Counted from the stretch's first letter, positions 4,666 through 41,094 are shown. The stretch is DNA of 64,000 nucleotides from Bispira polyomma (GCA_965649765.1 OZ287758.1:31930001-31994000); one strand, 5' to 3'. Program-made: numbers and translations. Notes: a model not told the origin generated them from the letters alone.

Positions 4666-5067
4666 ATACTTTCGACACAAAGAAAAGCTGTCCTCAGCTT
4701 TGTAAGAATGGATATCAATAATATGTTTTCTTTGCATACAACATCAATATAATTCACTAAGGTCTAACACCTAAAGATATAGGTGTAGAAATATAAACGC
4801 CTTAATGTATACTGATAAGAGAAACGTACAACATTCCGACACCTGCGGGTACCCTTCCCTTAACTCTTAATGAAGGACAGGTGTGTCTTTCTGTAAACCC
4901 TTTTCAGGCAAACACAACAACAATACAGCAACCACAGTACAATCAAGAGAAAACAGTTTGTGGGATAACAAATCATATGGACAATACAAACTCAGACAAC
5001 ATCAAATATGTTAAATAGAGGAGTTCAGTGAGAGTTAGAGGCATTGAAGGTTAGAGTCATTAAGAGT

Positions 5068-5511
5068 TTATAATATTATGAAGACTGTACAAGCTTGTGA
5101 ACTATAAGATAAGTTTTGATCATATGTACTAGAAGAGTCACAGCATGTTGTAATGAACATACCACAATTGTTCCTGTACATTTTGGACAGCTGTACATAA
5201 TATCCAAGGACACCAAAAAGTAACATTTTACTCGCATGTAGTCGCTGAACCTTATTCCCAGATATAGCCGCATAACTGGTTGTTGAGGCAAACATATATC
5301 AGCTTTTACACTCACTTAAACTGAACGAGATCGTGGATAAAACAACGGAGCTTGAAGTTTGACCTGCACCATATACAGGTGTCTCGGTTCCTGGTGGTAC
5401 AACAGCGTTGGTCAACAAGGAAGTATGCGAATACAAATTCACAAACAGTGGATCCATGTTGTCTGAAGCTACTGGCAGAACATCCTAGAATGCAAGAGGA
5501 TGTGTAGACAT
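5068..5511 (-). pseudogene. Accessory orfD, element 1
   Basis: Frameshifted ORFs 5068-5295 and 5076-5315; SLDIMYSCPKCTG...YLIVHKL aligns with the C-terminus of ORF 19949-20401. Confidence 0.7.
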
Positions 5512-5569
5512 TGTGTACTAGAGACTCACTGAAGCTTAGAGACAGATGTGGGTGCAGTTGGCAATAAGC

Positions 5570-5791
5570 TAGAGCTCTTGCTCTATGTCATGAAGAAAAT
5601 CGTGGGTATCCACTCCAACTTTTAAAGAAACTTTAATGAGGGTATGATTTCCATAAGCAACACCAGTGATAACATGTGTCTAAAATATGCCTTCACAATC
5701 TTATAAATATTCCAAGACGTCGCCACCATCAACTGAAAGGATTATTTGGTCACTGCCAAAAACTTGAATGTCCAAAATGAGGATTGTTCAT
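5570..5791 (-). pseudogene. Accessory orfC, element 1
   Basis: Nucleotide copy of ORF 13792-14058 with a deletion and stops. Confidence 0.7.
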
Positions 5792-6242
5792 TTGGTTTGT
5801 TTCCCTGACTAATCTGAATAAGAATGAAATATAAAAAAAACTTTCTCTTAAGGTTATGAAATAAATGTTTATGTAGTAAAATGGGAAATATTTGTTCCTA
5901 TTTGAAAAACAATACGAATAATTTGCCTATTTAGTGACATATACTGTAAAAACTGTGCTAAAATCGGAGTAGATTAAATGTCAAAAAAGTGTGGATTCCA
6001 ATTCTCGATTGGATCACACCAAGACGGATTATTGGGACGGTTGCACGGGAAATCCCTTCTTAAATGGCCATGTTTAATAATAGAGAGAGTTATATACGCA
6101 TCATAATCAGTCTAGGAGTCATCAGACTGTCTTTAATATTTGGTTAAATTACGGAGGTGATATAGCTCCTTGAAGGCATGCCTAAATTGTTTTAAAGTCT
6201 TGGAAAAAGATTCTGTAAGTTCTAATAGTGCGAAGTCATCCC

Positions 6243-6802
6243 TTAGGGGAAGGTCAAAGGTGTCCACCTTATAGTTTTTTGTGTATGCTCATCTAAAGAA
6301 CAAATCAAATCTATATCATAGAATCGCATGTCCCGGTTATTATTGAAATAATAGTATAGCGCATACAAGACGTCAGCCCATTTCTTCGGGGAAATAGGTT
6401 TGAAAGTTTTCAAAATATCTATGTCGTAAATATGATTTCGCAATTGTAGATATACACAGGCTCTGATCACGTCAGCTGTTTCAAAATCACCAGAGATTGG
6501 ATTTCCCAAAATACAGCTTAAAGCACATGTCAAAGATTCTACATTCTCTAAAATGCATGACATCCGACAATGTACTCCACTTTAATCGGAAAGTAGAAGA
6601 TTTTTCAAACTTTTTTTCAAAGCTCCCTAGTTTTTGAAAAATCTGGACAAGCAAAGAAACTTGTAGAAAGATGTCCAATTTGATTAGAATCTCTTGAAAC
6701 CCTCCGACAGTAAAGGTGATACATTCCATGATGTCCAGCAAATTCCAAAGGTAGCCAACAATAAAAAGAAATGTCAAAACTTACACTTGCAAAAAAAAAC
6801 AA
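6243..6802 (-). pseudogene. Accessory orfA, element 1 (helical protein of unknown function)
   Basis: DVIRACVYLQ...KKWADVLYALYYYF aligns with NIIRAAIYMQ...SQWASIAYILSYHY of ORF 29323-29916. Confidence 0.65.
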
Positions 6803-7324
6803 AGAAATTTATCAACAAAATCACTAAAAAACAAAAAAAAAATTCTAATTGGTGTACAAGTATTTCTGATAATATCCCTTAGTTGAGAGAGCTTTTTGAG
6901 TATTTCCAAATCCAACTACAGTAGCAAAAAACAGTGTCAACACTTATGAAAGAGTGAGGGATGGGGGTAGGTTGTGGCCAGTATTTACACACTGTGCTCA
7001 CTCAAATTAATCAGTCCCATTGTACTGGAGAAGTAGTTGGTGAGTGAATAAAAGGGTGTAAAGTGGGGCAGGCTTTTAACAAAAAAGGGTGCCGCTAGAA
7101 CAATATATAGTGTACAGTAGAAGTACGTTCTAGGATGAGATTAAGGTATTAACAGATTAAAGGATATGGTTCATAATGGATGCACTTCCCGTAATGAGAG
7201 AAAAGCATAAGGGATTAAGGGGGTGGCACTCAGGAAAGGTTTCACAGAGTCTCCATTTGGGGCTCGGAGTGCCTTTGTCCATGGTCTAATTGCCTTATTT
7301 GTTGCATTGGAATATATTGAGAAC

Positions 7325-9640
7325 TTACTTTACTATTTCTATTTTATGAAACAAGATATCTTGCACATCTCCATCAGTCACCACCGACACCCTGACTACA
7401 AACGCTTTATCTTTAATGTTTAAATACTTTAGAGCAGATTTTGGGCTCAGCCAAAGTTTTGAAGGTAAATAAATGATATTTCCTGACTCAGATAAGGTGA
7501 TCTTAAGAAAATCCCAGTTAAATTTGATCTGTGGAAATAATAGTTCTCTCAAAACTGCAAAAGAGAGCTCTCTCTGGTGTTTCTGGAGTTTTGTGAACAG
7601 AAAGGGATTTTTTTGGAAGAAACATTTACACAGTTTCAGTAGCAACAAAATAAATTGCATCATTATTACAAAGGATAGTAAACCCATAAGAGCATAAAGT
7701 AAATACTCTATCTCTGTCCCAAGTTTTAAGTTTAAGTCATGTGGATCCCTAGGTGCTAATGTGGCAAGAGCCACAAACTCGGCATCCCTTTGGATAAAGT
7801 TTCTCCTTAGGGTGGCCTGTGACTTGTACAGCTTAAATGTAACCACAAACTCAATTGTAACTACCATCAGTGTGACATAGATAGAAATTACTAACCAAAG
7901 CGAGTTAACAATGGCGATATCGGCCAAAAGTTTGACTAAAATAAGCATCCCACGGGGTGGCATAGAGGGTTTCATTATTTCTGATTGCCTTAAAAATTTT
8001 CTTTAAATCCAGAACACTTTCGTCCTGATTTACCAACATAAGCTAATGTCCAAACTTAACTCTAGTGAGATTAATTTCTGGAAGGCTAAATTGACCACTG
8101 CGTAATTTGTCAGTAAATCTACTTCTGTGGCAACTAGTAACTCCACATTGCCATATAATTTGGAACTTGTTCGTAGTCTGAAAATCCAGGGTAAGAGCAA
8201 CTTTCTGTGCTTGGGGGAATGTAAAAGCTACTACCTTTCAAGCTACATGAATATTTATGGATAATGACACAATTTGTACAGCCCTTAAAAATTCTTGGAG
8301 GCATGGATTCACATGTTTCGACCCAATTTCTTTCTGAAGTACCAATAAGTACTTTCCCATCTTGCAAATCTGTGAAGTGAGCTTCTTTAGGATCTGGATT
8401 TGGATGTAAACTAATTTTACATAAATTATATACTTTGTCAAGGTCATTGCTATATAAATCACTGGCATAGGTCGGTTGACTGCTCTCGAATATATTTTTA
8501 ATGTACTCTGACACTGTTTTAAATAAGATCCTGGACAAGACTGGAATGTAACCTGATCAATTTCAGTGAAAAATCTAATTTCTGTGGTCACTCCTAAATA
8601 AGCAGGCAGTTCATTAATAGATGTGAATGAATTATTCCTATGCCCTGCTACAACTGGAATGCTTTCTATCTTTTATACACTAAAAGCAAATTAGTACTAG
8701 ATATTGGTATATCTAGTTTAATGTACAGAATATTCTGTGTTCTGGCAAAACTTATTCTGTTAGACTGATAAAATGTATTTGGATTTGAATGTAATAATTT
8801 AAACGAAGGATGTTAAGTCTCAGATAGTAAGAGATGTATCCAAGAATAGTTTTTATCCGAATGGGAGAAATTACATGCATTGGCAAATAACCTTTTAGTG
8901 TTAAAGTGGTATAGCTTTCTATAATTTTGTCCATTTCTGATGTCATAAGCAACATAGAGGACACTTCTCTTGCATTAATTGAATGCATCAGTGTGACTAT
9001 TTCTTAAGAACTTCTATTCTGGCTTCCATCTCATTTAAAGTTTCAGTCCATGAGTGTTGTAATTTGTCCATTTCATGAATGCTTTCAATAATTAAGAGTT
9101 TGTTTTGTGTACAGCATCAGCTATACGCTTAAAATTCTCATTACTTTCCATTTCCAGGGATGATAATCAACTGTTAAACTTCATGAATCCTTTGAATGAT
9201 TCTGGGTTAGTTACCAAAGCGACGATATGAGCTTTGAGTATATTCATGTCTTTTGCAGTTGCTATCCCAAACAAATTCTTCGATATAGTTCCTAAAAAAT
9301 CTAGTGGGGCTCTTCTTTTCCTCTGTCGAGGTTTCATATTATCATTTAACTTCTGTACTCTGCCAGCCGGTATTAATCCGTTTATAATACTTCGTTTCTC
9401 ATTTAATTCCTTCTTCAACAATGCTCTGATTGTAATTTAGAGCTGTAAGATCTGGTAATGGAACTACAATTGTATGCCCTTAATACGAAATAGAGTTATC
9501 CAACACTGCAACTCCTCTAAGCACAGTTCTTTCACCACCACTTGTGGAAGTCCACTTTCAACAGAATATCTTCCAAGAATCAAGTTCAGGCCAAGGAAGA
9601 AGGTGGCCAGCCTACTCCATTGTGAGACCTTCATCTTCAT
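7325..9640 (-). pseudogene. env: env, class I fusion glycoprotein of the baculovirus-F/errantivirus type, frameshifted
   Basis: Signal-like N-terminus; furin site RKRR followed by APLDFLGTISKNLFGIATAKD; Cys-rich segment; two TM segments; colinear with env at 22115-24766. Confidence 0.88.
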
Positions 9641-9715: not shown

Positions 9716-10060
9716 TCAGCTTGGAGCATCTGTGCTTACTTCACACACAGATTTTTCATCAGGTTGATTTTTGTTAAGACTAAAATCAGCAACGAGTGTT
9801 GAGTTTTGGTCATCAATATTTAGGTCATCACTTTCTGCAGCTTTCTGTTTATAGCTGTCTGTAATATCTGCAATGTTTGACTCGTCTCTAACTTGTGGTT
9901 CATCTACATCAACCAATTGTTGATCTTCTTGTACTAAACCATCATGTTCTTCTGATGCATCATCTTCTCCCAGTATTGCTTTGAGTTCTTCGTCTATGGG
10001 TGGTACAACAGTCCAATCGACATAAGGTCTGAGACGGTCAACATGAAGTTGCGTTTTCCA
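9716..10060 (-). pseudogene. pol: Integrase C-terminal tail with acidic extension
   Basis: LHVDRLRPYV...PPIDEEL matches VHVNRLKPYV...PPIDEEL in ORF 25012-25680. Confidence 0.8.
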
Positions 10061-10300
10061 ATCAAAAATAAAAATGACAATTGCAAACTTAAATGTAGTG
10101 GAGCACACAGTTAATGTTTCTTTATCACAAGGCTTCAGCTTATCTTTTAAATGAGGAAATTGTTAGTTTAGGTCCTGCCAGTGAAATAGTAGATCCAGAA
10201 TCAAAGGGTGCAAATATTTTCATAAATGACAAACCTTTTTGTTTTATCATATTCTGCATTATACACGCATCTGTCTTGCCCCTCTTGCCACTCTGACTGC
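10060..10300 (-). pseudogene. pol: Retropepsin protease remnant
   Basis: Minus strand reads MKIFAPFDSGSTISL, an aspartic protease DSG motif. Confidence 0.7.
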
Positions 10301-10329
10301 GGGCAGTTTCCGTCATTACATTCGTCTGG

Positions 10330-11296
10330 TCTGCGCCACAGCCCCATTCGGTGACGCATGCTGATAGTTTAAAGGCCCTCTTGGGGTGTTATTCCATTGA
10401 TTAAAATTTCTACTTTTCAGCTGTGGGCAATGATTCTTCATGTGACCTCTCCTATTGTACCTGTAGCATGTAACATGTGCCAGCTGCGGCTTTATGACCA
10501 GATTTTTGACATCGTTGGCTTTAAAGCTGAAAATTTTCCTTCATAGCTGGTGTTTGGAATTGTGGTGCTCTCGTCTGAAACGGCTGGCTCCATAGATTAA
10601 TCTTCATAAACTGGACACTCTCTAGGTTATTGATAGCTTTAGCTAAATATCCCATACTTTTGTTGTAGGTATCCTGCATCAAATTAACTTTCAGAACCAC
10701 TGTCTTTGGGTTTTAAATTCTTAATACATTCTGCTAGTTTAGCTTTTGTCTTAGTAGCCTTCTGAGGATTATAAACCTAGTTTCGGCATCACCTTTTTGT
10801 AGCTGGCTGCATCTTTGTCTGACATCAGTTATATAGGCCTCCACTGTTTCTGCCGGTCCTTAACTCTATCAAACAAACCTTGCTCCTTCAACCAATTAAG
10901 ATTATTTGCGTCAATATATTTCTGCCTGAATGCCTCTAGCAGTTAGTTCCAATTTCCCCTCAGTGCTTCTAGCAAACTATTGTACCAAATTTCTGCTGAT
11001 TGCTCTACCATCAGGCGAAATATTTGGGGTTTTCTCCTGTCATTCATGTTACAATAATCTGAATAACTCAAAAATATTTTTATCCAACGGTCAGCATCTT
11101 CACTAGCCAATCCTTTAAATGATGCAGGTCTTAGAGATGACTGTTCGGCTTGATTACCTCTTTGCTGCAATGCTTGTTGTATTTTTTCCCGGTTGACTTC
11201 ATGAGCAGCACTCTGATGATCATTTTGTTGGATCAGCCCCTGTACCTGATTTCTTAGCTGATCATTATTTCCAGCTAAAACATCCAAATTTGCCAT
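10330..11296 (-). pseudogene. gag: gag of element 1
   Basis: ORF 10943-11296 is capsid-like, continues through stops to ETVEAYITDV and a decayed CCHC knuckle CYRYNRRGHMKNHC (~10425-10470). Confidence 0.82.
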
Positions 11297-11700
11297 ATCT
11301 GACCTTAGCAGGTAATATTTCTTAAAGGTTGATCTCTTCTTGGGAAGTTTTTCTGACTTCTTTGATGCATCCAGCTTGCTCCACTAAGTTTTGATTACCA
11401 TGCTGTTGGAATTATTCAATATCGACAGCATAGGCAGGTGGAAGATCTTTGTGGTGCCTTTTTAAATGTTTCATGAGCATTTTTCTACTTGCGTGTTTGT
11501 ACTTACGAAAACAACAGCCATGGCTCCAAGCGGTGGTGCTTTTGTCATTGTCAAAAAAAGTTAATGCGTGTGACCCTTCTCTGGTTAAGGTTAAAAGTTG
11601 TTTATCAGCACTTGTATGTGCTGGATGACACTGCTCTTGACATGTTTTTCCTTGAAATTACCTATGTGTCCTGGAAACCACCTTATTGTCCTTGAGATTA

Positions 11701-11716: not shown

Positions 11717-11719
11717 AAT

Positions 11720-13228: not shown

Positions 13229-13748
13229 GAGTTTATAATATTATGAAGACTGTATAAGCTTATGAACTATAAGGTAACTTTTGATCAAATGTGCTAGAAG
13301 AGTCACAGAATATTGTGATGAACATACCACAATTGTTCCTGTACATTTTGGACAGCTGTACATAATATCCAAGGACACCAAAGAGTAAGATTTTGCTTGC
13401 ATGTAGTGGCTGAACTGAACCCTTCATACCTGAATTCTCCGGCTGATTGGAGACGCCGTGGGTTCAGCAGCACATTATCCCCAAATATAGCCACACAACT
13501 GGTTGTTGAGGCAAACATATAGCAGCCTTTACACTCACTGAAACCGAACAAGGTCGTGTGGAAATCACAGGAGCTTGAAGTTGGACCAGCACCAGATACA
13601 GGTGTCGCGGTCCCTGCAGAGGTGGAGTTGGTGGTACAACGACATTGGTCAACGTGGAAGTATCCAAATACAAATTCACAAACGGTGGATCCATGTCATC
13701 TGAAGCTACTGGCAGAACATCGCCGAATGCAAGAGGACATGTAGACAT
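13229..13748 (-). pseudogene. Accessory orfD, tandem copy
   Basis: VAIFGDNVLLNPRRLQSAGEFRYE aligns with VAIYNKSVVFDPYKLARPGSFRIE (19949-20401); frameshifted. Confidence 0.7.
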
Positions 13749-13791: not shown

Positions 13792-14058
13792 CTAGAGCTC
13801 TTGCTCTATGTCATGAAGCAAATCGAGGATATGCACTCCAACTTTTAAAGAAACTTTAATGAGGGTCTGATTTCCATAAGCAACACCAGTGATAACATGT
13901 CTCTCAAATGTGCCTTCACAATCCTGTAAATATTCCAAGACGTCGCCACCATCAACCGAAAGGACTATTTGGTCACTGCTAAAAATGCCATATACATTAA
14001 AAATGGTAATTGAAGTCATAGTACTCAGGCTTGAATGTCCAAAATGAGGATTGTTCAT
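13792..14058 (-). CDS. Accessory orfC, tandem copy
   Basis: Open 88-aa ORF with the YLxDxE...TG...G..TLI...L..G pattern shared with 20445-20771; acceptor at 14081. Confidence 0.65.
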   Translation of the reverse strand: MNNPHFGHSSLSTMTSITIFNVYGIFSSDQIVLSVDGGDVLEYLQDCEGTFERHVITGVAYGNQTLIKVSLKVGVHILDLLHDIEQEL

Positions 14059-14430
14059 TTGGTTTGTTTCTCTGACTAATCTGAATTAGAATGAAATATA
14101 AAAAAAACTTTCTCTCAAGGTTATGAAATAAATGTTTATGTAGTAAAATGGGAAATATTTGTTCCTATTTGAAAAACAATACGAATAATTTGCCTATTTA
14201 GTGACATATACTGTATAAGAAATCAGTGGTTTTTTTTCATGTATATTTTTTTTTAAATACGGAAATAAAATCAAATTTGAAGATCCAGAGGTAAAAAATG
14301 TGCTAAAATCGGAGTAGATTAAATGTCAAAAAAGTTCGGATTCCAATTCTCGATTGCATCACACCAAGACGGATTACCGGAACGGTTGCACCAGAATTAC
14401 CTTCTTAAATGGCCATGTTCAATAATACAG

Positions 14431-19928: not shown

Positions 19929-19948
19929 GTCTAAAAAGAACACATCAC

Positions 19949-20771: not shown

Positions 20772-20980
20772 ATCTTTTGTGGTGTCCTTGGATATTTATT
20801 TTGTTCCCCTTTTTTTCTCAACACTTTTGAAACAACAGCTTTGTTTTAAACAAGAACTTGTATACTATTTTACTTCACAACTGTTAACTTTATTTTACTT
20901 TGTTTTGCTCTTCTCCAGTATTGAGTGTACACTATAGATGCTCAAGAATGGGTGTGGGAATCTGACATCCCAAAGATTCC

Positions 20981-21270: not shown

Positions 21271-21272
<2 letters not shown>

Positions 21273-21312: not shown

Positions 21313-21314
<2 letters not shown>

Positions 21315-26474: not shown

Positions 26475-26490
26475 CCCGGCATCTCCACCA
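26475..26490 (-). promoter_or_regulatory. tRNA-Ala primer-binding site
   Basis: TGGTGGAGATGCCGGG, identical to 11701-11716. Confidence 0.9.
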
Positions 26491-29322: not shown

Positions 29323-29916
29323 TCACGTTTGTATCTGAAGTCGACACATCCCACCCCCATGAGATCCGTGGTTGGGACAATTCATAAAGATATACGTAGA
29401 GCTTGTTAAAATATTTGTTAGGATCCATGGCATGACATCACTGACTCGGTGGTATAGGTCCGCCTGATAGTGGTAGGACAAGATGTAGGCAATACTTGCC
29501 CATTGGGACCAGGTAATTTTTCCCACCCAAGCGGTCAAATGATAAAAAGTTTCCTTTGTGGTGAACTGCATATAAATGGCAGCCCTTATGATATTAACCA
29601 TGTCAGGTTTCTGAGTTCTAGGTTTTTGCCTAGAAATAAGATTAAACACAGCAATCAAAGATGTAGCTGTAAAACGTAACATATCTTTGTAGGAGTTTTT
29701 TCTACCCAAACGCTGTGCAGGGTGTTCAAAGGTTACTATGTTATCATGATTCCCTGGTTGATCCAGTAGTTTCCCTAACCGAAACCTTTTGACCGCCAAA
29801 TCTGAATAAAAAAGCAAGTCCACAAGAGGAAAATACCTTGTAAGCCCCCCAGTTGGCAATCTCAACTTAAGGTCAACAGATTCAAGATCTGGTGATGGAA
29901 TTAATTCCTGAAACAT
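29323..29916 (-). CDS. Accessory orfA
   Basis: Open 197-aa ORF homologous to 6243-6563; partial duplicate at ~31590-31830; upstream TATAAAAG at ~30190. Confidence 0.68.
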   Translation of the reverse strand: MFQELIPSPDLESVDLKLRLPTGGLTRYFPLVDLLFYSDLAVKRFRLGKLLDQPGNHDNIVTFEHPAQRLGRKNSYKDMLRFTATSLIAVFNLISRQKPRTQKPDMVNIIRAAIYMQFTTKETFYHLTAWVGKITWSQWASIAYILSYHYQADLYHRVSDVMPWILTNILTSSTYIFMNCPNHGSHGGGMCRLQIQT

Positions 29917-30944: not shown

Positions 30945-32317
30945 TTTGTATTTTGTTGGTTCTGTTATCTGGTTGCATAATACACAAACAATATTATTGT
31001 ATTGGTTTATCTTTTAAACTGGAGATTTCTTTTTTCTTTTAAAATGAAGATTGTTTTTCTATCAATTGAACAATGATAAACGGCGGGATTGCCGACTCGC
31101 TTATTATAATATTGGAAGGTCGATTTCAAAAATGTGGGGCATCCAGAAATCCATAGGGTCAAAGCTTGGAGGAGTTAGATCACTAAACTGCCCAGGAAAA
31201 ACAAACATTGTTTGGGTCAATTGTATTGGCATTATAGAAGCTGTTATCCCAGCCCAGACCGATGTCAAAATCGGCAGATACCGGTGAAAAAGAATGTATT
31301 GAATCCCAATCCTCTGGGGGATCAAGCGGGGTGCTTGACCAACAAGTTTCACAATACAGTGGCCTGTTGTAACAGCATAGCTGTGCTCCCATTTGGCATC
31401 CGTTACTGTGGGTGTCTGGAGGTACTCATCCTCATAAGAAGGACATCGTATTCAGTAACACCTGGGACATGTTCCTAATTTTTCGGTTATCAGAATATTG
31501 ACCTATAAATTATCTGCGAAATTTTCATAATGTGACTTTTGCTTTCTGTTCGTCATCAGAAGGGCCAAAGTTGAGCTGATCTGAAGACAACACAACCCAT
31601 CCCCATGAAATCCGTGGTAAAGACAACTCGTAATTATCTACTTGAAACTGTTTATGACCCACTGTATGATATTATATGCGCGGTGCTATGGGTCCTCTGC
31701 ATAGTGGTAGGACAGGATGTAGGCAATATTTTCCTATTGAGACCTGGTAACTCTGCCTACCCAAGCAGTCAAATTTAAAAATGCTATCCCTGTTGTAAAA
31801 TGCATATAAATGGCAGCCCTTAAACTGTCCATAGATTTTGTTGACTGACCAATTGCTTTGTCCTAAGTCTCCTGCATCAGATTAACCTTATCTGGGGAAA
31901 AGGTTTTAGACTTCAGATTTTCTATACTCTAAGCCAATCATGCCTTAGTTTCCAACTCATCTAGGGTTTGTGGCTGTTGACCTATGACAAACATACACAT
32001 GATTATCTTTCTACTACATTTACCATTATTGTTGCAAGGTTATTCCCAGTGGTCGCCTCGACCCCTAACTCATTCGTTTAACCCAATATTTTGCTGGGAT
32101 TTTTTACCTCAGAGAAGTATGAAGACAAGAAGAGAGAAATTTGATTACTGTCACATTATTTATTAGTTAACAGTTTTATCTACTCCACTGACTGCAATCA
32201 AGCTTCTTTAAACTTTAACTAGCTGCATCTTCAGCCTCCAATTCAACTAACTGTGTGTCTCTGGGCTAAACCTTATATAGGTTCAATAGCATTTTTAGGA
32301 ATCTGAAGGTATATATA

Positions 32318-33743
32318 TGTTACAGTAAATATGTGAAATCAGTAAATACGCGTAATCCCTAAAAATTTCAGTAAATACACGTACTTACTGGTTTTGGGCC
32401 TGCATTATTTCACAAGTTTACTGGTGGTCATTTCAGTAAACACGTGTAATGTGAAAATTTCATTCAAGGGTTTTATTGACATTTAAAAGATAAATATCAG
32501 TGTTTGGTGAATTCATCAGTCTTTCTCATGAATATGATATACATGTAGTATTTGGTGGTTTGTGTTTAAAGTTATTAAAGTATCTGGATTTAGTTAGGTC
32601 GCTTCAAAGCATGCTACATCACATGCATTTTGGATTTACATTATTGTCTGTTTACACAAGTGTGGTCAAAATATTGGTTTACACATTTTAAAAACAAATT
32701 GAACACTCTTATTTGTTTTACATTTAAAATTGAATAATTATAAAACTGTGAAAATTAAATATAATTTTAAATTACTATTTTATTAAATAAAGACTAAATG
32801 TTATAAGGTACTAGTTTGTAAAACTTTCTTTTGATATTATTATAAGCAGTTAACTGTGCTTCTATAGCATCCAAATAACATCAAAGACTCTATTACATGT
32901 CTGTACAGGCCACACTAGCTTTGAAGGTAATATGATAATTAGATGAAAAGAACCCTTTATAAACCCTTCTTTTGATGTACCTAAAACTGTAAAATGTGGT
33001 TTCTGTGTAAGGTAAATCTCATTGAATACTTACAATTGCCTATATTGGATGCTATATTCAAGCAAGATCTATACATTTCAGCAAACTAAAAAAAACTTTC
33101 TTTCAAAAGATTAATATTTTCAAATGATTGAAAAAGATAAAAAATGCTGACCAAAATAAGAGTAGACATATTTACTTACTATTACCAACCACTTATACAT
33201 GTACATATTTTCTGTAATAATGTAACTAATGAATTGGTGTCCTTTACTACATTAAATATACCACATGACATGTAATATATGAAAAAATGTCTTTTATATG
33301 AACAAATCTATTTCAAAAGTCATTTTCAGGTGTAAATATATATTTTAAAGACTACTTGGAACATATTGGTGTAATAAATTGGATGATATGTATAACATAC
33401 ATTTAGGATAGACAACATAGTATATATGTACATGTAATGTGTCTAAATAAATTTACCTAAATAAAGATGGACTCTTTAATAACTTGTAAAATCACCACTA
33501 CCACATAATTATACATCATATGGATGAAAAATACTTAATGTGGCAAGTTAATCATAACTTGAAGAATAATAAGACAATTCAGTAAATACGTGAACTTACT
33601 GGACCCAAAAACCAGTAAGTACGCGTATTTACTGAAATCTTTAGGGATTAAGCGTATTTACTGATTTGGTCAGTAAATACGCGTATTTACTGAAAATTTC
33701 AGTAAATACGCGTATTTACTGATTTCACATATTTACTGTAACA
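32318..33743. mobile_element. Non-autonomous TIR DNA element inserted in the LTR
   Basis: TIR TGTTACAGTAAATATGTGAAATCAGTAAATACGCGTA at both ends; flanked by (TA)n; absent from the element 2 LTRs. Confidence 0.88.
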
Positions 33744-34468
33744 TATATATATGAAATTGAGAATGTGATGTGATATGAGATTTAAGGAATTTTATAACTC
33801 ACTTAACACCAATGGAATGCATTTACGTTATGTAAAAGATAATGGAATGCATGGAATTTTATGAAGGAATGAATGTATGCATGGAATGTTATGTAGAAAT
33901 GCAAGTGCAACTGTTAAGGAATTTTGGCAATAACAATTGCCTCTGGCCAAATTAATTGTGTCCACACAATTACTTAAAGTTTGGATAAAGGTGTAAGTAT
34001 GGCCGAGGACCATGCCCTCACTCTTAGTGAAAAACAGATACTTACACCTTTATGGCTAAATGGATACACCTCTTGAAAAGGAACACAAATATATTATGCA
34101 CACACATTTATAAGTATATAGCAGAAAACTCCTGTATTAATACAACATACAGATGATTGTAACTCACTAACCTTTCTATTACATTTACCAGTAAACTTCA
34201 GATATATAATTAAACAAAAGCTTATATAATATAATGTAAACGTTATCCATTATATGTTATTATAACTACGGTGTAAAACCTGTACCAACATTGTATACTG
34301 AATTAAATTGTACCAGTCTCCAAACTATTAAATCTGATAAGTTAAGTCTGATAAGTTCAGTTTGTGAAACACTGATGCTGTTTGGGACAATTTTATTTAC
34401 AAATTCCAGATTTGGAAATATGTACAGCTGTATAGTAAATTTTTGATTTAAAAATGCCAAAGCCAAAA

Positions 34469-35350
34469 TCAAAAAGAGTGGGGGATGATTGCAGCAAAAG
34501 TTGTTGGTATAATTGAAGCTGCATGAGAAGTAGATTCTAAATATGTCCAAATAGCATGAGATTTCCAGCATCCATGTTTTTGGATGTTTTGCAATCTTAC
34601 ATTATTATTGAAGGCCAGGGATGCTCCTGACCTTCTAAAGCAGTGAAAAGAATGATCATTTGTTGGAATGTTATTTTGTTGTAATATCTTTTTCAAAATT
34701 GCTCTTAATTTTGATTCTGTAATGCACTTTCCATTTGTTTGTGGGTCTGCTAACAATGGTGCAGTACCAGGCAATGGATATTTTTGGAAAAGTATCTTTG
34801 CAGTTGTTACTGGACATAACCATGGATTTTTCAAAGTTGGTAACTGAATAACATCTGGTTGTGTCCTTATTTGGTTGGTTTTTAACCATTTCAATACAAG
34901 ATGAATTCCTGGTGGTGAAAACACCACATCTGACCTAGTTATATGACGTGTATGATCAAACTGATTTTTTTATTGAAGGTGTCAGGTTTGATATTCTCAA
35001 AAATAAAAAAAATGCAAACAAAAATGCTATTCTATATAGTTGTGTGTAATTTATATAAATCAAACACTCCTTTTGGCCTTGGCTTATATGTGGAGGTCAA
35101 CATTATAGCCTTTTGATATGATGAGATTCTTGCATCATACAATTGCTCATCAGCTATGTGATTATGTTTAGCAAAAGACCTTATTGCTGCCAAGTAGTTA
35201 TTCACTACTTTGTAAGAAAGGTTATTTTGTTGCAAGAACTCCAAAAAGTCCAAAATGGCTGCCAAACCAAAAGTGTTTTGTAAGTTATGGTATATGCTAA
35301 ATGCCAAATATAATCTGATCTGACTGTTATATTGTCTAACTGTTCTTGGT
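34469..35350 (-). pseudogene. Tyrosine recombinase (SAM-like N-terminus plus catalytic domain)
   Basis: KTNQ, LCPV, HCFRRSGASLA...HGCWKSHAIWTY. Confidence 0.9.
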
Positions 35351-35430
35351 CTGTGTGCTGTCTTGATTCTTTTTATTGCTGTACTAGGTAGTTGTCTTGT
35401 ACTGTCTGTTGTATCTGCAATATATATTTT

Positions 35431-37654
35431 CTAAATGTCATTGTCAAGTTTAAACAATTGTATGGAAACGTCAAACATGTTAAATTTCTTACGAATTATT
35501 GTTTTTACTTCAACTATATATGTCCCTAAGTCATGCCATCTTGACAAAGTGTCAGCTATTATATTCTTTTTCCCTGCTATGTGTTGTGTGAATTTCGATG
35601 TTGTGCTCTGCACATATTAGCCATAACGGTCTCAGGCAAGTACTTAAATATGGGTCTCTTGTGTTGGATGATCGAACCACTGATACGACTGCTGAATCAT
35701 CCGACTGGATTCTTATCGTTCCGTTCTGCCATTTTTTTTGCCCATAATTTTAGAGCAATTATGACACTTACCATTTCAAAATGTACAATTTTTTTTTTTG
35801 TGTATTTTTTTTCTTTCATTGACATATACATTAGCACAATTCACAAAAACACAGTTACAATACAATAAAGAACACACTGTTACAATACAATAAAGACAAA
35901 AATCCAAACAAAACAAGATACCAAAAACCCTCGCTGTACCGTTGAATCTCATGGCAAACTTTATGAACCAATTTAAGTCTTTTCTAAAGTTTTCATCCAA
36001 TACTATTGTATTTTTACTTGTAGAATTTCGTGATACTTGTAACATTCTATTCATGAAAATTCTTGATGGTTTAATACATCTATGGATATATAAAAGTTTT
36101 CCTAACAAGGATTGGTACTTGTTTTTCTTTACCTTTTTTAAATCCTTAAAAGATATACACGTTTCATGAATACTTTGTAATTTCTCATTATCAATACTTG
36201 GCGTTTTCTCGTTAATATCTATAATTATACCCATACATGTTACTCTTTTACTTGGTTCTACTAATTTTGACTTATTAATAGGTAGACCAAGTTGGTTCAA
36301 AAGTTCAATCAGAAATTCATATGCTAAGGTTGCCTTAACTTTTTCTTGTACTAATATGAAATCATCGATGTAGTTAAATACCTTGAAATTATGTTGACGC
36401 ATTATATGCGTTATTGCGTCCGATACGCGCATAAAGACTGACGTGCCGTGTGTTAACCCGAACGTCCAAGTTAAATCTACAAAATATTTATTCTTCCATT
36501 TATATCCTAATTTAAGACTGTCTACCGGATCTATACGTAAGTTTCAAAACGCATGCGCAATATCGATTTTTGCTAACATAGCTTCATCACCTATAGTCTG
36601 TATTTCTTGTACTATTTGGTCTATTGTCGGTAATTTCAATTCAAACTCTACCTTGTCATAACTATCTTTTACTGTACAGTTGTTTACTGAAAACCCTAAT
36701 GGATGAGATAAGTTTAAAATTAAGCGTCTCTGGTCAGTGTCTTTTGGTCTTGTCAAAAGTGGTGAACAGTAAAAATATTCTGGAATCTTATTATTTGTTA
36801 TTTCTATAATAGTCCCTTTTGTCTGTTTTTTTTTTTTAAATATTTATCAATATAATCTGGATACTGATTTGCAGAAAAATGATTGTCAGTATGTTTGTTA
36901 TCTAATCTTTGTCGGTCATACAAGGAAATAGAAAATCCATATTCCAGGTATTGTAACAATAATTCGTCCTCATAATTCCACAAGTATTTTTTCCAATTTT
37001 CTATGTTCAGTCCACATTTAATCGGTATTCTTGCTGCCTTATAATTTTCCATTCCTGTTTAATTACTTTATATACATATAGCAGTTTGTCAACAGTATTT
37101 ATGTCCACTTGTTCTTTGTCTGGTCCTGTAAAGGAGAAATTAATTTTTCCTGTACTTATAAATCCATACTTCCTACAGTCTATGTCTTTTGTGTCCTTAT
37201 TTCTATTGTCATTGTCTTCTACATATTCATCCAGTCTATCCTTATCATACAATAGTAGTGTCGATATTAGTGATGAAGCATTATCTATCAGTTTATCTGT
37301 GTATTCATCTACTATTCTTGTGTGTTTCTGTTTTGTCTGTATGACTGTTCTATCTGTTTCTGTTTTTTGATTCTGTTTGTTAATTTTCCTTGTATTTTTG
37401 TTCTTTTCGTTCTGTATTATTGTCTTGTTTTTGATTATTCTCTCAAGCTCTTTGTCTGTTTGTGAGCATTGTGATGCAATCACAATGTCTCCTGACTCCT
37501 GGCTGCGAATGTGTTGTTTGCTGTATTTGTCGACATCAGCGCCTGTGAGTAGAAAAGCCGGTTCAACGTCCAGTTCGTTCCATCGAGCCAGGTCAATCTC
37601 CCCTCTTCCACGTCGTGCATGTTTGTCGCGTAGGACCCTCTCGCCACCTGTCAC
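35431..37654 (-). pseudogene. DIRS-type RT/RNase H
   Basis: RRLILNLSHP, AKIDIAHAF, YIDDF, HIAGKKNIIADTLSRW; many frameshifts. Confidence 0.9.
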
Positions 37655-38615
37655 GATATATTACTTGCATCCCTTAACGTGTCTCCCAGCTGTTTTAACA
37701 TGGCCCTTGAAATTGCATTATTTTTTACTTCCAAAATGTTCTGAATTTGTCCTGACGTGAATTGGGCAATACTAAGTTCATCATAAGCTATTTTTTTTTT
37801 ACTAATACCTGTCAAACACCCCTCATTCGGCCAACGAAAAATTGGGTCGGCTGTACATATGTCTGCTGTATTAAATCTACCAGATTTTCTTTTCATGAGG
37901 GACTTACCCTGGAGGAGTTCGCTTGCTGGTAGTTGTTCATATTGCTGTAGTCGTGCACTCACTTCATTCTGTAGTAATGCCGAATGACGAAGTACATCAG
38001 CTGATGGTACAATGTCCTGTCCTTCTAACGCAGCTGGAAGATTGTATCGCCCCTGTGTCTGCGAAATTCCTCCTGGTTGTATCGGCATTATCTCGGCTTC
38101 CACTGTTGGCTGTGGTAACGAGAATTCGGATAAACGCAGTTGTGACCCTGTGGTAGGTCTCGTTTGCTGTAACCCTCCCTGTGGTGGTTGCCACTCGTGT
38201 AAAACTGGTTGTAATACTGTAGCCAGTCTTGTTTTCTGTGTATGAGCGGACGTGCTTGGTAAAGCATATGAAGTGGTATTAGGTACACTAGCAACTGAGG
38301 AAACTGTTACCTTTTCTCTTTTTTTTTTAACCCGTCCACGTCTTGTTGTAATCTGTTGAACGACTTCAGCATGGTTTCCATCATTCCCTGCTGTCGTAAA
38401 CACGTTTCTTTGATTTCGTCAGACGAAGATTTACCTTCTGGCGACTTCGATACTGAAGCACCGACGTCCTCTTCATATTCATCACTCACATAACTAGTAT
38501 CCAGTATTACTTCTCGAGTACATCGAGCCCCCACTGGACTTGTGTGTCGTATTTTACACCTTGAACACGAGACTGCCTGTAGTAGTCGTGAAGTTTTCTT
38601 TATTGCTTTTCCCAT
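37651..38615 (-). pseudogene. gag-like ORF of the YR element
   Basis: N-terminal CSRCKIRHTSPVGARC finger; IAYDELSIAQFTSG segment; position 5' of RT. Confidence 0.7.
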
Positions 38616-39312
38616 TATAAATACCCTCCAATAGTATGACACACACACATATAAACTAAAAACAATAACTAAAAACGTAAAATGTCGTCTTCATATATAA
38701 AATCATATAAAATATATTTTTTCTTTCCAAAATCCAATATGGCGCCTAAAATTTTTAATTTTTCCTTGTTTCTACTTTGGCTACCAAAGTAAATGTAAAT
38801 GCCATATCAGACCCCAGCTACTGCCCTTAGCCTATTTCACCCTAACGACCACACATAAATATACTGTCGTTAGTCGCTAAACTACAGGGGTTTACTGTAG
38901 AACCCTGAGGTGCCATGCCACTAATGTGTGCAGTGACAATCACACTTTGAAGATAAATACACACAAAACAAAAGGTTATAATGTCAAATATATACCAACA
39001 CACATCAATATGCCAAAAAGTGTCTTTTTAAAATATTTATTGTAAAATTACAACATCTATTAATACACACATTTGATATAACATGACAATAATTTGAAAT
39101 ACACTGTTGTAGACATTGCTGCTGATTTATAGCTTATATTTCAACATACATAGTGCACATATAATATAGTAGTACATATAAAATTATGTAATAATAATAC
39201 AATTATTATAATGCAACATATAAAATACATGTAAAACATTTATGTATCCCCTTTTTTAGTGCCGAACCAACTATACTCGTAAACACTTGAACTTATTTAG
39301 TGTTTCTGCTGT

Positions 39313-39609
39313 CTACTTACTGGGATCCTCCAGGACTCCATCTCTCAGCACGCTGAGAAGCATATCTAATTTGCGTTTAATCACCTCTAGGTAGTTGCAA
39401 AAACACTTGCGTTCGAGGTAGACCTCTACTGACACCAGCCTACCTGGGCACCTACGGTAGTGGCTGGGGCTCCTTGGAGTGCTCTGCAGGACAGTCCTGC
39501 ACCAAAGGCAGGTCAAATCCTCCAGTACTGGGTTTCCTAACCTGGCTGGCACAGTGAATTGGACCCTACAGTTGTGCGTCCCAACGGTGAAACATCTGGG
39601 GCATTCCAT
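39313..39609 (-). CDS. Accessory orfE, element 4
   Basis: Open 98-aa homolog of 19638-19928; ATG directly after ttttgtag. Confidence 0.7.
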   Translation of the reverse strand: MECPRCFTVGTHNCRVQFTVPARLGNPVLEDLTCLWCRTVLQSTPRSPSHYRRCPGRLVSVEVYLERKCFCNYLEVIKRKLDMLLSVLRDGVLEDPSK

Positions 39610-39625
39610 CTACAAAACACATCAC

Positions 39626-39930
39626 TCATCTGGTCAACTGATGCATCTTTAAGTATTCATGAAGAACTTTCTGGATTGTTGCAGCAGAATACTGACAGCT
39701 TGTAAATACCAGAACACCACTGCGGCAGAAAGTCGGTGACATGTCCATAAGTATCTTGTCATAGAGCTTGCCTCTCATGAAAGCTCTACAACTTTTTATT
39801 CCAAAGGAACCTGGCCTAGCCAGCCCATAAGGGTCAAACACTCCACTTTTGTTGTAGATGGCCACTAGCTTTGGTTCTTCACTTGAAGCCACAGGGCTGT
39901 GTTGTGGTAGTCTTCCTATCGCCGAGGTGG
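39626..39930 (-). pseudogene. Accessory orfD, element 4 (N-terminus deleted)
   Basis: Close homolog of the 19949-20401 C-terminus. Confidence 0.72.
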
Positions 39931-39939
39931 GCTGATGTC

Positions 39940-40155
39940 AAGTACATCTAGCAGGTCTTTCAAAAAACCAGCAAAGTTTGAACCTGCACGTAAATAGGCA
40001 GAAACTAAAGTTAGGTCTCCTAGGCAATCTCCTGTTACTACTTCAAGGCGATAAGCTTCCTCGGTATCGGACAGGTATGCAGGACACAGACTTCAGAGTT
40101 GTGTTGAGAAATTCTTTCTGAAGCCTATTAAGCTGATGATTGTTTTTTACGCCAT
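39940..40155 (-). pseudogene. Accessory orfC, element 4
   Basis: Nucleotide homolog of ~20550-20771; acceptor at 40158. Confidence 0.72.
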
Positions 40156-41094
40156 ATCTATGTAAAAATAATTACAATGTCAGTAGTCATATGGTTGTCT
40201 TTGTGTTTGTAAAGCTTTCTCAAAAGAGTGTTATTAATTATCAGCAAGGAGAATAATTATATAACTATATGGCAGAGAACCCATTAATAATATAATACAA
40301 CATACACCTGCTTATAATTCACTAATCTGTCTACTACATTTACCAGTAAGTAGTTTAAAACTCTTAGTTTTGAACCCTTTACTTTTATATTTTTAATTTT
40401 TACACCTCCGTGAGGTGTGGTATCACTGTTAGTCATCAACACTTAACAGAATTTATAGTCAGTTAAATGTAAATATCAATCCTCCGTTAAATTTAAATGT
40501 CACTCCTCAGAAAACCTGGCATGATGAATGAAACCCTACAGATGTGCTTCCCGACAGCAATACATCTGGGGCATTTCATGTCTGCAGCTGATTTTTCTGA
40601 ATTGACTGCAATAAGTTAAGGAGCCTTTGGCATCTTCTCAGAATAAATTTATGCAGTGCATGAGGGGTTTACAATATTAAGATACTTACTGCAAATATCA
40701 ATCCTCCATTAAATGTTAATGTCACTCATCAGAAAACTTATCTGGCATGATGAAGGAAACCCTGCAGATGTGCTTTCCGACAGCAATACATCTAGGACAT
40801 TTCATGTCTGCAGCTGATTTTGCTGAAGTTACTGCACAGAAGAAATATATTTGGCTGTTTTACAATATCAAGATACTCGTACCTTTATGGCTTAATACAT
40901 ACACCCCTTTAATAAGGAAAACAAATATTATCTCACTGTTGCCTATTAATTTGAGAATTTTTTATCTCTTGAATCCGTATTTATTGGATTGTTTTAAACT
41001 CTGCAATAACCTTTTTTGCCTCAGTAAATATATATTTCGACTTTGCAAAATTTCTGTAATTCCTAGGAGTTTGGAGATATTCATCCTTCATCCT

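What the first reader, a model, noticed from the sequence alone, without database searches (positions are those of the whole stretch)
4666..40160. A 'complex' env-bearing Gypsy-like retrovirus family with a conserved accessory-gene cassette between env and the 3' LTR
Seen in sequence: small ORFs occur downstream of env in a conserved order. Element 1 and its tandem copy have orfA-B-C-D; element 2 has C-D-E inside TSD-bounded LTRs; element 3 has A-B-C; element 4 has C-D-E. Homology is visible at protein level between subfamilies whose LTRs differ, which argues for selection on the proteins. Established: Gypsy elements and errantiviruses normally carry only gag-pol-env, while multi-gene 3' accessory regions are typical of vertebrate complex retroviruses (lenti-, delta-, spuma-, epsilonretroviruses). 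Inference: an invertebrate infectious retroelement lineage with its own regulatory or anti-defence genes. I do not recognise any of the five proteins.
Basis: partly seen in the sequence, partly recalled or inferred. Interest (0 to 1): 0.92.

Follow-up and report, generated by a model that had tools for sequence, protein, structure and literature searches.

The report
Extra gene pair after env in gypsy-like retroelements
A family of envelope-carrying gypsy-like retroelements in an invertebrate genome keeps two extra small protein genes, plus lineage-specific ones, between env and the 3' LTR. These genes are under purifying selection and match no known protein, a layout otherwise typical of complex vertebrate retroviruses.

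Summary
The observation largely holds. All retroelement genes lie on the minus strand, and every copy in the window is defective. Element 2 is bounded by 97%-identical LTRs and a 4-bp target duplication. It carries an integrase remnant, an F-type env, then ORFs C, D and E about 1 kb before the 3' LTR. C and D recur in elements 1, its tandem copy and 4. E occurs in elements 2 and 4, A in elements 1 and 3, and B only in element 3.

Ten related loci from one public assembly (ERZ22147071) settle the matter. Near-complete elements there read gag, pol (PR-RT-RH-IN-chromodomain), env, C, D, and always in that order. C and D are 0-43 nt apart or overlap. Between lineages dN/dS is 0.07-0.21, as low as gag. 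AlphaFold gives confident folds: C is beta-grasp-like, and D has a disordered N-terminus plus a Cys/His alpha/beta domain. Nothing known matches either one.

The ORF directly after env is env's own C-terminal part. Element 4 has no env.

The family is of the chromodomain-bearing env-carrying Ty3/gypsy kind already described, but the post-env genes appear undescribed. Their function is only inferred.

The parts
27015..27018 (.). Target-site duplication CATT, upstream flank of element 2
   Evidence: same 4 bases at 18027-18030
26493..27014 (-). Element 2, 5' LTR (522 bp, TG..CA)
   Evidence: 97% identical to the 3' LTR
26475..26490 (-). PBS-like 16-mer TGGTGGAGATGCCGGG directly after the 5' LTR
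   Evidence: the same 16-mer follows the LTR of element 1 (11701-11716) and of locus L002
25372..26299 (-). Element 2, pol remnant (integrase core and SH3-like C-terminal part only). gag, protease, RT and RNase H are deleted. One frame change.
   Evidence: Pfam rve, SH3_Tf2-1; 60% aa identity to L002 pol residues 969-1271
22115..24652 (-). Element 2, env (F-type, with second TM segment and long C-terminal tail). Broken by 2 in-frame stops, no frameshift detected.
   Evidence: Pfam Baculo_F E 3.6e-10; 35% aa identity over 807 of 896 residues of the L003 env
20772..22114 (-). Element 2, env-C spacer. No conserved ORF. Holds an A(40) run at 21274-21313.
   Evidence: no match to any other copy
20445..20771 (-). 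Element 2, gene C (108 aa, uninterrupted)
   Evidence: C profile E 4.7e-37; homologs in L002-L006 and L009
19949..20401 (-). Element 2, gene D (150 aa, uninterrupted)
   Evidence: whole-length 52% match to P0001 and 27-30% matches to P0004-P0006 in an exhaustive HMMER search; profile E 4.4e-69
19554..19991 (-). Element 2, gene E (Cys/His-rich). One premature stop relative to the 152-aa relatives.
18539..19553 (-). Element 2, non-coding spacer between E and the 3' LTR, ending in a short purine run before the LTR
   Evidence: homologous to element 4 at 38944-39244 and 33932-34313
18031..18538 (-). Element 2, 3' LTR (508 bp), followed by TSD CATT at 18027-18030
10319..11383 (-). Element 1, gag. 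Broken: 2 frame changes, 4 stops.
   Evidence: 51% aa identity to the whole L002 gag; PBS-like 16-mer at 11701-11716
9899..10319 (-). Element 1, pol remnant (about 90% of pol deleted)
   Evidence: 145 of 1465 residues alignable
7325..9524 (-). Element 1, env including its C-terminal TM/tail part. Broken: at least 3 frame changes, 8 stops.
6243..6581 (-). Element 1, ORF A (106 aa)
   Evidence: homologous to element 3 A by jackhmmer; no relatives outside the window
5572..5926 (-). Element 1, gene C, decayed (2 stops)
5079..5315 (-). Element 1, gene D, C-terminal part only recognisable
   Evidence: D profile E 4.8e-09
4084..4960 (-). Element 1, 3' block holding the (truncated) 3' LTR. Repeated at 12019-12883.
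   Evidence: 88% identity; the true LTR end of this subfamily is at about 11717-11720
13795..14085 (-). Tandem copy of element 1, gene C
   Evidence: C profile E 2.7e-15
13244..13463 (-). Tandem copy of element 1, gene D (partial, 1 stop)
   Evidence: D profile E 1.6e-10
29323..29916 (-). Element 3, ORF A (197 aa, uninterrupted)
   Evidence: no Pfam, PDB or database relatives
28775..29293 (-). Element 3, ORF B (172 aa, Cys-rich, uninterrupted)
   Evidence: relatives only in the decayed duplicate
31006..32039 (-). Decayed duplicate of element 3: gag fragment running on into A-like then B-like sequence (several stops and frame changes)
39919..40140 (-). Element 4, gene C (partial)
   Evidence: 68% aa identity to element 2 C
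39629..39937 (-). Element 4, gene D (C-terminal two thirds)
   Evidence: 68% aa identity to element 2 D
39313..39609 (-). Element 4, gene E (98 aa ORF, small internal deletion)
   Evidence: dN/dS 0.15 against element 2
34314..38943 (-). Nested RT-bearing element without terminal repeats, inserted in the E-LTR spacer of element 4. Not part of the cassette.
   Evidence: clean insertion relative to element 2; weak RVT_1 match
32030..33925 (-). Element 4, 3' LTR remnants (32030-32316 and 33746-33925) split by a 1.4-kb insertion
271..591 (-). Further copy of gene C (102-aa ORF). A gag fragment lies upstream at 1079-1258.

Best explanation
The window is a graveyard of at least five defective copies, from three subfamilies, of one family of Ty3/gypsy (Metaviridae) retroelements. 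The family has the gene order gag, pol (PR-RT-RH-IN-chromodomain), F-type env.

Shown: members carry a conserved two-gene module between env and the 3' LTR.
- C is 87-155 aa. It has a beta-grasp-like domain of about 80 residues followed by a helical or acidic tail.
- D is 150-170 aa. It has a short acidic-hydrophobic motif at the N-terminus, a disordered Ser/Thr/Pro-rich linker, and a compact Cys/His-bearing alpha/beta domain of about 95 residues.
- The two genes are always in this order, 0-43 nt apart or overlapping by 4 nt, and lie 0.8-1.1 kb before the LTR.
- Lineage-specific ORFs are added around this core: A and B upstream, E downstream, and Y in L002.
- C, D and E are kept by purifying selection in the lineages that went on copying, and decay after insertion.

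Inferred: C and D are non-structural proteins made from a subgenomic, probably spliced and bicistronic, mRNA. They act together on the element's own expression, through RNA export or translation, or through transcription from the LTR. In this model D binds nucleic acid through its metal-binding domain and recruits host factors through its N-terminal motif.

My confidence that these are real, selected element genes is about 0.9. My confidence in the regulatory function is about 0.4.
For: Synteny. env-C-D-LTR occurs in L002, L003, L004/L005 and L006, and env-C-D-E-LTR in L009 and window element 2. D-E-LTR occurs in L001. C-to-D gaps are -4, 10, 15 and 43 nt.

Selection.
- L004 vs L006: C 0.07 (changes by codon position 1/1/11), D 0.17 (10/6/24), gag 0.14, env 0.33.
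- Element 2 vs L009: C 0.19, D 0.12 (45/36/81).
- E, L010 vs L009: 0.21.
- Element 2 vs element 4: E 0.15.
- Near-identical copies L009 vs L001: D 0.77 and E 0.51, as expected after insertion.

ORF maintenance. D is 166 aa in 7 of 9 distinct variants of one subfamily. E is 152 aa in 6 copies on 6 contigs. Identical C proteins sit on 4-5 contigs. The L002 LTRs are 100% identical over the 572 bp held in the locus, with gag, pol, C and D uninterrupted.

Folds. The D domain has pLDDT 80-97 and the C domain 76-91. The best Foldseek leads for D in two independent libraries are the zinc-bearing IF2-beta/eIF5 fold, followed by small RNA-binding alpha/beta folds. Cys and His positions are conserved in D and E.

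Precedent. A spliced-mRNA-encoded RNA export factor is known in the invertebrate Ty3/gypsy element Cer1 (PMC10309623).
Against: There is no transcript, splice-junction or peptide evidence. No Foldseek match reaches E 0.001, and the IF2-beta-like resemblance has TM 0.3-0.37. No Pfam, PDB or database homolog exists outside one assembly. Metal binding is inferred from conserved Cys/His only, and in the element-2 lineage the second Cys pair is CC rather than CxxC. The dN/dS values rest on short genes, NG86 only, and dS is saturated in the deeper pairs. All window copies are dead, so nothing here bears on activity.
Confidence: 0.55

Rival explanations
1. The genes are real and selected, but they work as antagonists of host defence (small-RNA silencing or restriction factors), as Vif, Vpx, Vpu or Bet do in vertebrate retroviruses. 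D would be an adaptor whose N-terminal motif hijacks a host machine, and C would be a ubiquitin-like partner.
For: The layout of D (short linear motif, disordered linker, small metal-binding domain) fits viral adaptor proteins. C is beta-grasp, that is ubiquitin-like, in topology. The 3' region gains and loses lineage-specific ORFs (A, B, E, Y), as accessory regions under host pressure do. The whole 3' module has been swapped between lineages (L003 vs L004).
Against: Between related lineages C and D evolve conservatively (omega 0.07-0.17), without the fast or positive evolution usual for host antagonists. No similarity to any known antagonist was found. There are no data on host small RNAs.
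Confidence: 0.22
2. The genes are real and selected, but they encode virion, assembly or entry cofactors (structural accessory proteins) rather than regulators.
For: They sit next to env, and env here has an unusual second TM segment and a tail of about 190 aa. Accessory small ORFs with a transmission role exist in the Drosophila MDG1 group (PMC11952523).
Against: C, D and E have no signal peptide or TM segment in the sequences read. D is half disordered. Only Y of L002 looks hydrophobic, and it has no support beyond three near-identical copies.
Confidence: 0.12
3. C-D is a captured or hitch-hiking module (host-derived or from another mobile element) that travels with the LTR without serving the element.
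For: The module is exchanged as a block together with the LTR. Many internally deleted copies keep it (elements 1, 2, 4 and the copy at 271-591).
Against: No cellular homolog turned up in 1.84 billion representative proteins or in the 5.8-billion-cluster index. Position, order and orientation are conserved in six subfamilies diverged to 25-45% aa identity. Purifying selection is as strong as on gag. The element 4 RT-bearing insertion, which suggested a separate element, is a clean nested insertion absent from element 2.
Confidence: 0.07
4. Not genes at all: chance ORFs, decayed pieces of env, or fragments of nested repeats.
For: The ORF directly after env is indeed part of env. B and Y have no support beyond close copies. 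Similarity between elements 2 and 4 is also visible in non-coding frames because the DNA is 80% identical.
Against: See synteny, dN/dS, ORF-length maintenance and confident folds above.
Confidence: 0.03

Closest known systems
Env-carrying Ty3/gypsy elements outside insects ('ancient errantiviruses'), chromodomain-bearing clade of Cnidaria, Mollusca and Annelida (Chary and Hayashi, eLife 2026, PMC13524379)
   Same: LTR element with gag, pol carrying a C-terminal chromodomain, and an F-type env. Multiple near-identical copies per genome.
   Different: That study defines and analyses three ORFs only. Its main text does not mention ORFs between env and the 3' LTR. Here 2-3 further selected genes lie there.
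Insect errantiviruses (gypsy, ZAM, Idefix and relatives)
   Same: Ty3/gypsy backbone, baculovirus-F-like env, 4-bp target duplication.
   Different: Insect errantiviruses have no chromodomain and no genes after env (my knowledge and PMC13524379).
Cer1 of C. elegans and its CERV protein (PMC10309623)
   Same: An invertebrate Ty3/gypsy element that encodes a non-structural protein from a spliced mRNA, needed for export of unspliced genomic RNA. This is the functional model I favour for C-D.
   Different: Cer1 has one such protein and no F-type env. No sequence or fold relation was detected: searches with C, D and E returned no named hit.
MDG1-group sORF1/sORF2 of Drosophila (PMC11952523)
   Same: Small accessory ORFs in invertebrate Ty3/gypsy elements with low dN/dS.
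   Different: Those lie upstream of gag in elements without env, and sORF2 is a TM fusogen-like protein. C, D and E are soluble and lie after env.
Bdelloid rotifer LTR retrotransposons with diverse ORF3 (PMC5408684) and plant Ty3/gypsy additional ORFs (PMC7264820)
   Same: Modular gain of extra ORFs between pol and the 3' LTR.
   Different: There the extra ORF takes the place of env (esterase, exonuclease, env-like) or is a plant-specific, often antisense, ORF. It is not a multi-gene block downstream of a true env.
Complex retroviruses of vertebrates (lenti-, delta-, spuma-, epsilonretroviruses)
   Same: Small regulatory or accessory genes clustered 3' of, or overlapping, env, with lineage-specific gain and loss.
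   Different: They belong to a different family (Retroviridae). No homology to C, D or E was found. Expression by multiple splicing is known there but is only inferred here.

Membership tests
Ty3/gypsy (Metaviridae) LTR retroelement | Paired LTRs with TG..CA ends, short target-site duplication, PBS after the 5' LTR, purine tract before the 3' LTR | tested here: met
   Element 2. L002.
Ty3/gypsy (Metaviridae) LTR retroelement | gag with capsid-like domain and CCHC knuckle; pol in the order PR-RT-RNase H-IN | tested here: met
   L002 gag and pol by Pfam. Window element 1 gag is 51% identical to it. Window copies themselves lack most of pol.
Env-carrying, chromodomain-bearing Ty3/gypsy clade (PMC13524379) | F-type (baculovirus F / paramyxovirus F-like) env downstream of pol | tested here: met
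   Pfam Baculo_F E 3.6e-10, 39.5 bits against a cut-off of 24.1, for element 2 env. Weak hit in L009. The env proteins of L002-L006 are 35-40% identical to it but do not reach Pfam on their own.
Env-carrying, chromodomain-bearing Ty3/gypsy clade (PMC13524379) | Chromodomain at the C-terminus of integrase | tested here: met
   Pfam Chromo in pol of L002 (E 6e-09), L003 and L009. Not detectable in the truncated window copies.
Env-carrying, chromodomain-bearing Ty3/gypsy clade (PMC13524379) | Placement of pol (RT/IN) inside that clade in a phylogeny | not tested
   No reference sequences of that study were available to the tools. Fetching animal-virus comparators is barred.
Insect Errantivirus | No chromodomain; insect-type RNase H bridge region; insect host clade | tested here: not met
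   A chromodomain is present. The bridge region and the host were not tested.
Complex retroviruses (Retroviridae) | Accessory or regulatory genes 3' of or overlapping env | tested here: met
   By layout only: C, D and E lie between env and the 3' LTR.
Complex retroviruses (Retroviridae) | Homology of pol to Retroviridae, and of the accessory proteins to Tat, Rev, Tax, Rex, Tas or Bet-type proteins | tested here: not met
   pol has Ty3/gypsy-type Pfam domains plus a chromodomain. C, D and E give no Pfam, PDB or BFVD match of significance.
Cer1 CERV-like export factors | Sequence or fold relation to CERV; expression from a spliced mRNA; nuclear localisation with genomic RNA | not testable with these tools
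   No named hit came back from any search with C, D or E. There are no expression data.

The most novel reading that the evidence does not exclude
This is the first 'complex' metavirus. An env-carrying Ty3/gypsy lineage of invertebrates evolved, independently of vertebrate retroviruses, a 3' block of non-structural genes. The block consists of a conserved C-D pair with new folds plus exchangeable extras (A, B, E). It controls the element's own RNA or counters host silencing, and it is swapped between lineages together with the LTR.
Probability: 0.5. Interest if true: 0.85.

Novelty: new variant of a known kind. Interest (0 to 1): 0.72.

Why it matters
Accessory genes are the textbook line between simple and complex retroviruses, and they have been treated as a vertebrate retrovirus trait. 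Here a selected multi-gene block sits after env in invertebrate Ty3/gypsy elements. This suggests that such complexity arose more than once.

It also yields two or three orphan protein families with confident predicted folds to study, and it makes one question directly testable: how do env-carrying retroelements outside insects handle spliced and unspliced RNA, and host silencing?

There is a practical consequence too. Pipelines that annotate these elements as gag-pol-env miss about 3 kb of their coding and cis-acting content.

Tried and rejected
- **C-D-E as the gag-like ORF1 of a tyrosine-recombinase (DIRS-like) element.** In element 4 they lie upstream of ORFs with weak RVT_1 and Phage_integrase matches. 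Rejected: that 4.6-kb stretch is a clean insertion relative to element 2 and has no terminal repeats. In L002-L006 and L009, C-D follows env inside LTR elements.
- **A of element 3 as diverged gag.** Rejected: in the decayed duplicate a gag fragment merely runs on into A-like sequence. The gag profile does not hit A.
- **'ORF after env' as an accessory gene.** Rejected: it is env's C-terminal part.
- **P0003 (1545 aa, 10 repeats) as a D relative.** Rejected as a repeat-summed false positive.
- **Searches that returned nothing:**
  - Word-index search with A.
  - Pfam on A, B, C, D, E and Y.
  - PDB sequence profiles. The 'Bagel' hits to B have no stretch passing on its own.
  - Foldseek at E of 0.001 or better.
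  - Rfam and tRNA scans of the window.
  - JGI metagenome scan with D.
  - Exact look-up of the 585-aa ORF.
- **Host species not identified.** The hints are a tyrosinase gene in L008 and the host range of the chromodomain clade (PMC13524379).
- **Comparison with named proteins.** I had Tat, Rev, Tax, Tas/Bel1, Bet, Vif, CERV and sORF1/2 in mind as comparators. None came back as a hit, and no letters of them were used.

Full report
**1. What is in the window**

ORF listing, self-comparison and Pfam scans show that all retroelement genes between 270 and 40160 lie on the minus strand. Every copy is damaged.

Element 2 is the cleanest.
- Its LTRs at 26493-27014 and 18031-18538 are 97% identical with TG..CA ends.
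- Both flanks carry the 4-bp duplication CATT.
- A PBS-like 16-mer follows the 5' LTR, and a short purine run precedes the 3' LTR.
- Inside, gag, protease, RT and RNase H are missing.
- What remains is an integrase remnant, then an env with a Pfam Baculo_F match above the curated threshold. That env is broken by two in-frame stops.
- A 1.3-kb spacer follows, containing an A(40) run.
- Then come C (108 aa), D (150 aa) and E, a 1-kb non-coding stretch, and the LTR.

The other copies:
- Element 1 has a broken gag, almost no pol, a badly broken env, then A, C and D.
- A tandem partial copy upstream of element 1 repeats C, D and the LTR.
- Element 4 has C, D, E and LTR remnants. It is interrupted by a 4.6-kb RT-bearing element that is a clean insertion relative to element 2. 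It has no env.
- Element 3 has two uninterrupted ORFs, A and B, and a decayed duplicate in which a gag fragment runs on into A-like sequence.
- A further C copy sits at 271-591.

**2. Are the small ORFs genes?**

An exhaustive HMMER search with D against 1.84 billion representative proteins found five true relatives. One is a whole-length 158-aa protein at 52% identity, and three are 166-241 aa proteins at 27-30% identity. A sixth hit, P0003, is a repeat artefact. All are encoded on megabase contigs of one ENA assembly, ERZ22147071.

Their surroundings are decisive.
- **L002** reads gag (Retrotrans_gag, zf-CCHC), pol (protease, RVT_1, RNase H, integrase zinc-binding domain and core, SH3, chromodomain), env, C and D. 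An 828-bp spacer and an 865-bp LTR follow. The two LTRs are 100% identical over the 572 bp held in the locus.
- **L003, L004/L005 and L006** show gag-pol-env-C-D as well.
- **L009** is colinear with window element 2 and reads pol (with chromodomain), env (Baculo_F), C, D, E, LTR.
- **L001** has D-E-LTR next to a satellite array.

C and D are never separated. The gap from the C stop to the D start is -4 nt (an ATGA overlap), 10, 15 or 43 nt.

**3. Selection**

| Comparison | Gene | dN/dS | Changes by codon position |
|---|---|---|---|
| L004 vs L006 (84-93% nt identity) | C | 0.07 | 1/1/11 |
| L004 vs L006 | D | 0.17 | 10/6/24 |
| L004 vs L006 | gag | 0.14 | 15/7/32 |
| L004 vs L006 | env | 0.33 | 29/26/54 |
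| Element 2 vs L009 | C | 0.19 | 32/20/45 |
| Element 2 vs L009 | D | 0.12 | 45/36/81 |
| L010 vs L009 | E | 0.21 | 21/15/34 |
| Element 2 vs element 4 | E | 0.15 | 15/7/30 |
| L009 vs L001 (95% nt identity) | D | 0.77 | 7/6/6 |
| L009 vs L001 | E | 0.51 | 19/10/16 |

The last two values are what is expected when differences arise after insertion. This contrast between deep and shallow comparisons is the usual signature of genes that matter while an element lineage is copying.

ORF length is also kept. D is 166 aa in 7 of 9 distinct variants of the L002 subfamily. E is 152 aa in six copies on six contigs. Identical C proteins sit on 4-5 contigs.

Caveats apply. The genes are short, I used Nei-Gojobori estimates only, dS is saturated in the deeper pairs, and my first estimates were taken from BLASTP segments, which biases them downward.

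**4. What is core and what is not**

- C and D are present in all six subfamilies.
- E occurs only in the lineage of elements 2 and 4, L001, L009 and L010.
- A occurs only in window elements 1 and 3. It has no relatives in any locus or database.
- B occurs only in element 3.
- A hydrophobic 138-aa ORF, Y, overlaps the start of C in L002. It is known from three near-identical copies only.
- The ORF that directly follows env is not a separate gene. This is 7325-7975 in element 1, the second env ORF in element 2, and a 139-aa ORF in L002. In L003 and L004, and in sister copies of L002, the same sequence is the end of one 725-896 aa env ORF.
- So env in this family has a second TM segment and a tail of about 190 aa, and L002's env is broken once, by a frameshift.

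**5. Mosaic structure**

L003 and L004 are 88-92% identical in gag-pol and 74-82% in env. They then lose all DNA similarity from just after env to the LTR, where C and D are only about 40% identical in protein. The 3' module (spacer, C, D, spacer, LTR) has therefore been exchanged between lineages by recombination.

Three subfamilies share the same PBS 16-mer.

**6. What the proteins look like**

C, D, E, A, B and Y have no Pfam family at the thresholds used and no PDB sequence relative.

AlphaFold2 on shallow natural alignments gave the following.
- **D:** a disordered N-terminal 67 residues, then a confident domain with pLDDT 80-97 and the order helix-strand-strand-helix-strand-strand-helix.
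- **C:** a confident 80-residue strand-strand-helix-strand-strand domain, followed by a long helix and a disordered tail that is acidic in some lineages.

No Foldseek match reaches E 0.001.
- For D, the best leads in both PDB and BFVD are the zinc-bearing IF2-beta/eIF5 fold (E 0.1 and 0.0097), followed by small RNA-binding alpha/beta domains. A granulovirus ORF33 appears at E 0.04.
- For C, the leads are protein L/G B1 and ubiquitin/SUMO-like beta-grasp domains (E at least 0.1).

D keeps a CxxC at the start of the domain, a Cys in the strand 3-4 loop and a C-terminal His in all lineages. E keeps eight Cys/His positions. Its only sequence lead is a C1 domain at E 0.066. Metal binding is my inference from these patterns.

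**7. How it most likely works**

Shown: a selected, tightly linked C-D gene pair lies 3' of env, with lineage-specific additions.

Inferred:
- The genes are the last on the genomic RNA, so they need a subgenomic message. Each copy has a pyrimidine run plus AG 30-60 nt before the C start, but that is weak evidence in AT-rich DNA.
- The short or overlapping C-D junction suggests one bicistronic message and a joint function.
- D's layout is that of an adaptor or regulator: an acidic-hydrophobic N-terminal motif, a disordered linker and a small Cys/His domain with RNA-binding-like fold leads.
- An element that splices out env must still export unspliced RNA. I therefore favour a role in the element's own RNA handling or transcription, as with Cer1 CERV (PMC10309623).

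My probabilities for function are about 0.4 for this role, 0.2-0.25 for defence antagonism, about 0.1 for a virion or entry role, and the rest unknown.

**8. Comparison with what is known**

The backbone matches the env-carrying Ty3/gypsy elements found across metazoans. In particular it matches the chromodomain-bearing clade of Cnidaria, Mollusca and Annelida (PMC13524379). That study works with three ORFs and does not mention genes after env.

Accessory ORFs in invertebrate LTR elements are not unheard of:
- Cer1 CERV.
- MDG1 sORF1/sORF2, which lie upstream of gag in elements without env (PMC11952523).
- Bdelloid ORF3 types, which take the place of env (PMC5408684).

A conserved multi-gene block downstream of a true env is not in the papers I could search. 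I therefore rate it a new variant of a known kind.

The host is not identified. All relatives come from one assembly whose contigs were gene-called exhaustively, so their absence from other sources says little about distribution.

Noticed in passing
window 22115-23152 and 7325-7975 (-); L003 5510-8200: Env of this family is unusually long (up to 896 aa). After the usual membrane anchor it has a second hydrophobic segment and a weakly conserved tail of about 190 aa with no Pfam match.
   Followed up: partly
window 34314-38943 (-): A 4.6-kb element nested in element 4, with no terminal repeats. It has ORFs with weak RVT_1 (E 0.004) and weak Phage_integrase (E 0.001) matches and a short tandem repeat at its 3' end. 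LINE-like or DIRS-like; unresolved.
   Followed up: partly
window 21274-21313 (-): An A(40) run inside the env-C spacer of element 2. It may be the tail of a nested retroposed sequence. The spacer matches nothing else in hand.
   Followed up: partly
window 47397-49154 (-): A 585-aa ORF with a significant DUF1280 match (E 2.3e-18). Exact look-up found no record. Not examined further.
   Followed up: partly
window 60578-63433 (+): A 951-aa uninterrupted ORF with no Pfam family above threshold (weak REase_MTES_1575 only). It is preceded by 194- and 262-aa ORFs on the same strand and may be another mobile element.
   Followed up: no
window elements 1, 2, 3' and 271-1258: Several copies are internal-deletion derivatives that lost most of gag-pol but kept the 3' region with C-D (or A-B). 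In two of them a gag fragment is joined to the 3' region.
   Followed up: partly
L003 vs L004: Mosaic relationship: gag-pol 88-92% identical, env 74-82%, and no DNA similarity from just after env through C, D and the LTR. This points to recombination that swaps the 3' module.
   Followed up: yes
window 26475-26490 and 11701-11716 (-); L002 573-590: The same PBS-like 16-mer follows the 5' LTR in three subfamilies whose LTRs are otherwise unalike. The primer tRNA was not identified.
   Followed up: partly
L001 1657-9848: An 8-kb satellite array of roughly 125-bp units, 84-89% identical between register shifts. It abuts a D-E-LTR fragment and replaces env and C.
   Followed up: no
L010 11720-19157 (-): A row of large ORFs (694, 452, 412 with dUTPase, 484 aa) next to a D-E fragment. 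Possibly a different retroelement with a dUTPase.
   Followed up: no
BFVD hit Q9DVZ9: The D domain resembles a 97-aa ORF33 protein of Plutella xylostella granulovirus (E 0.04, TM 0.51 on the target). This is not significant, but env here is also baculovirus-F-like.
   Followed up: no
The window therefore holds more decayed copies than four.
   Followed up: partly
window 55091-55473 and 57538-57925: Short tandem duplications (units of about 110 and 158 bp, 87-97% identical), unrelated to the finding.
   Followed up: no
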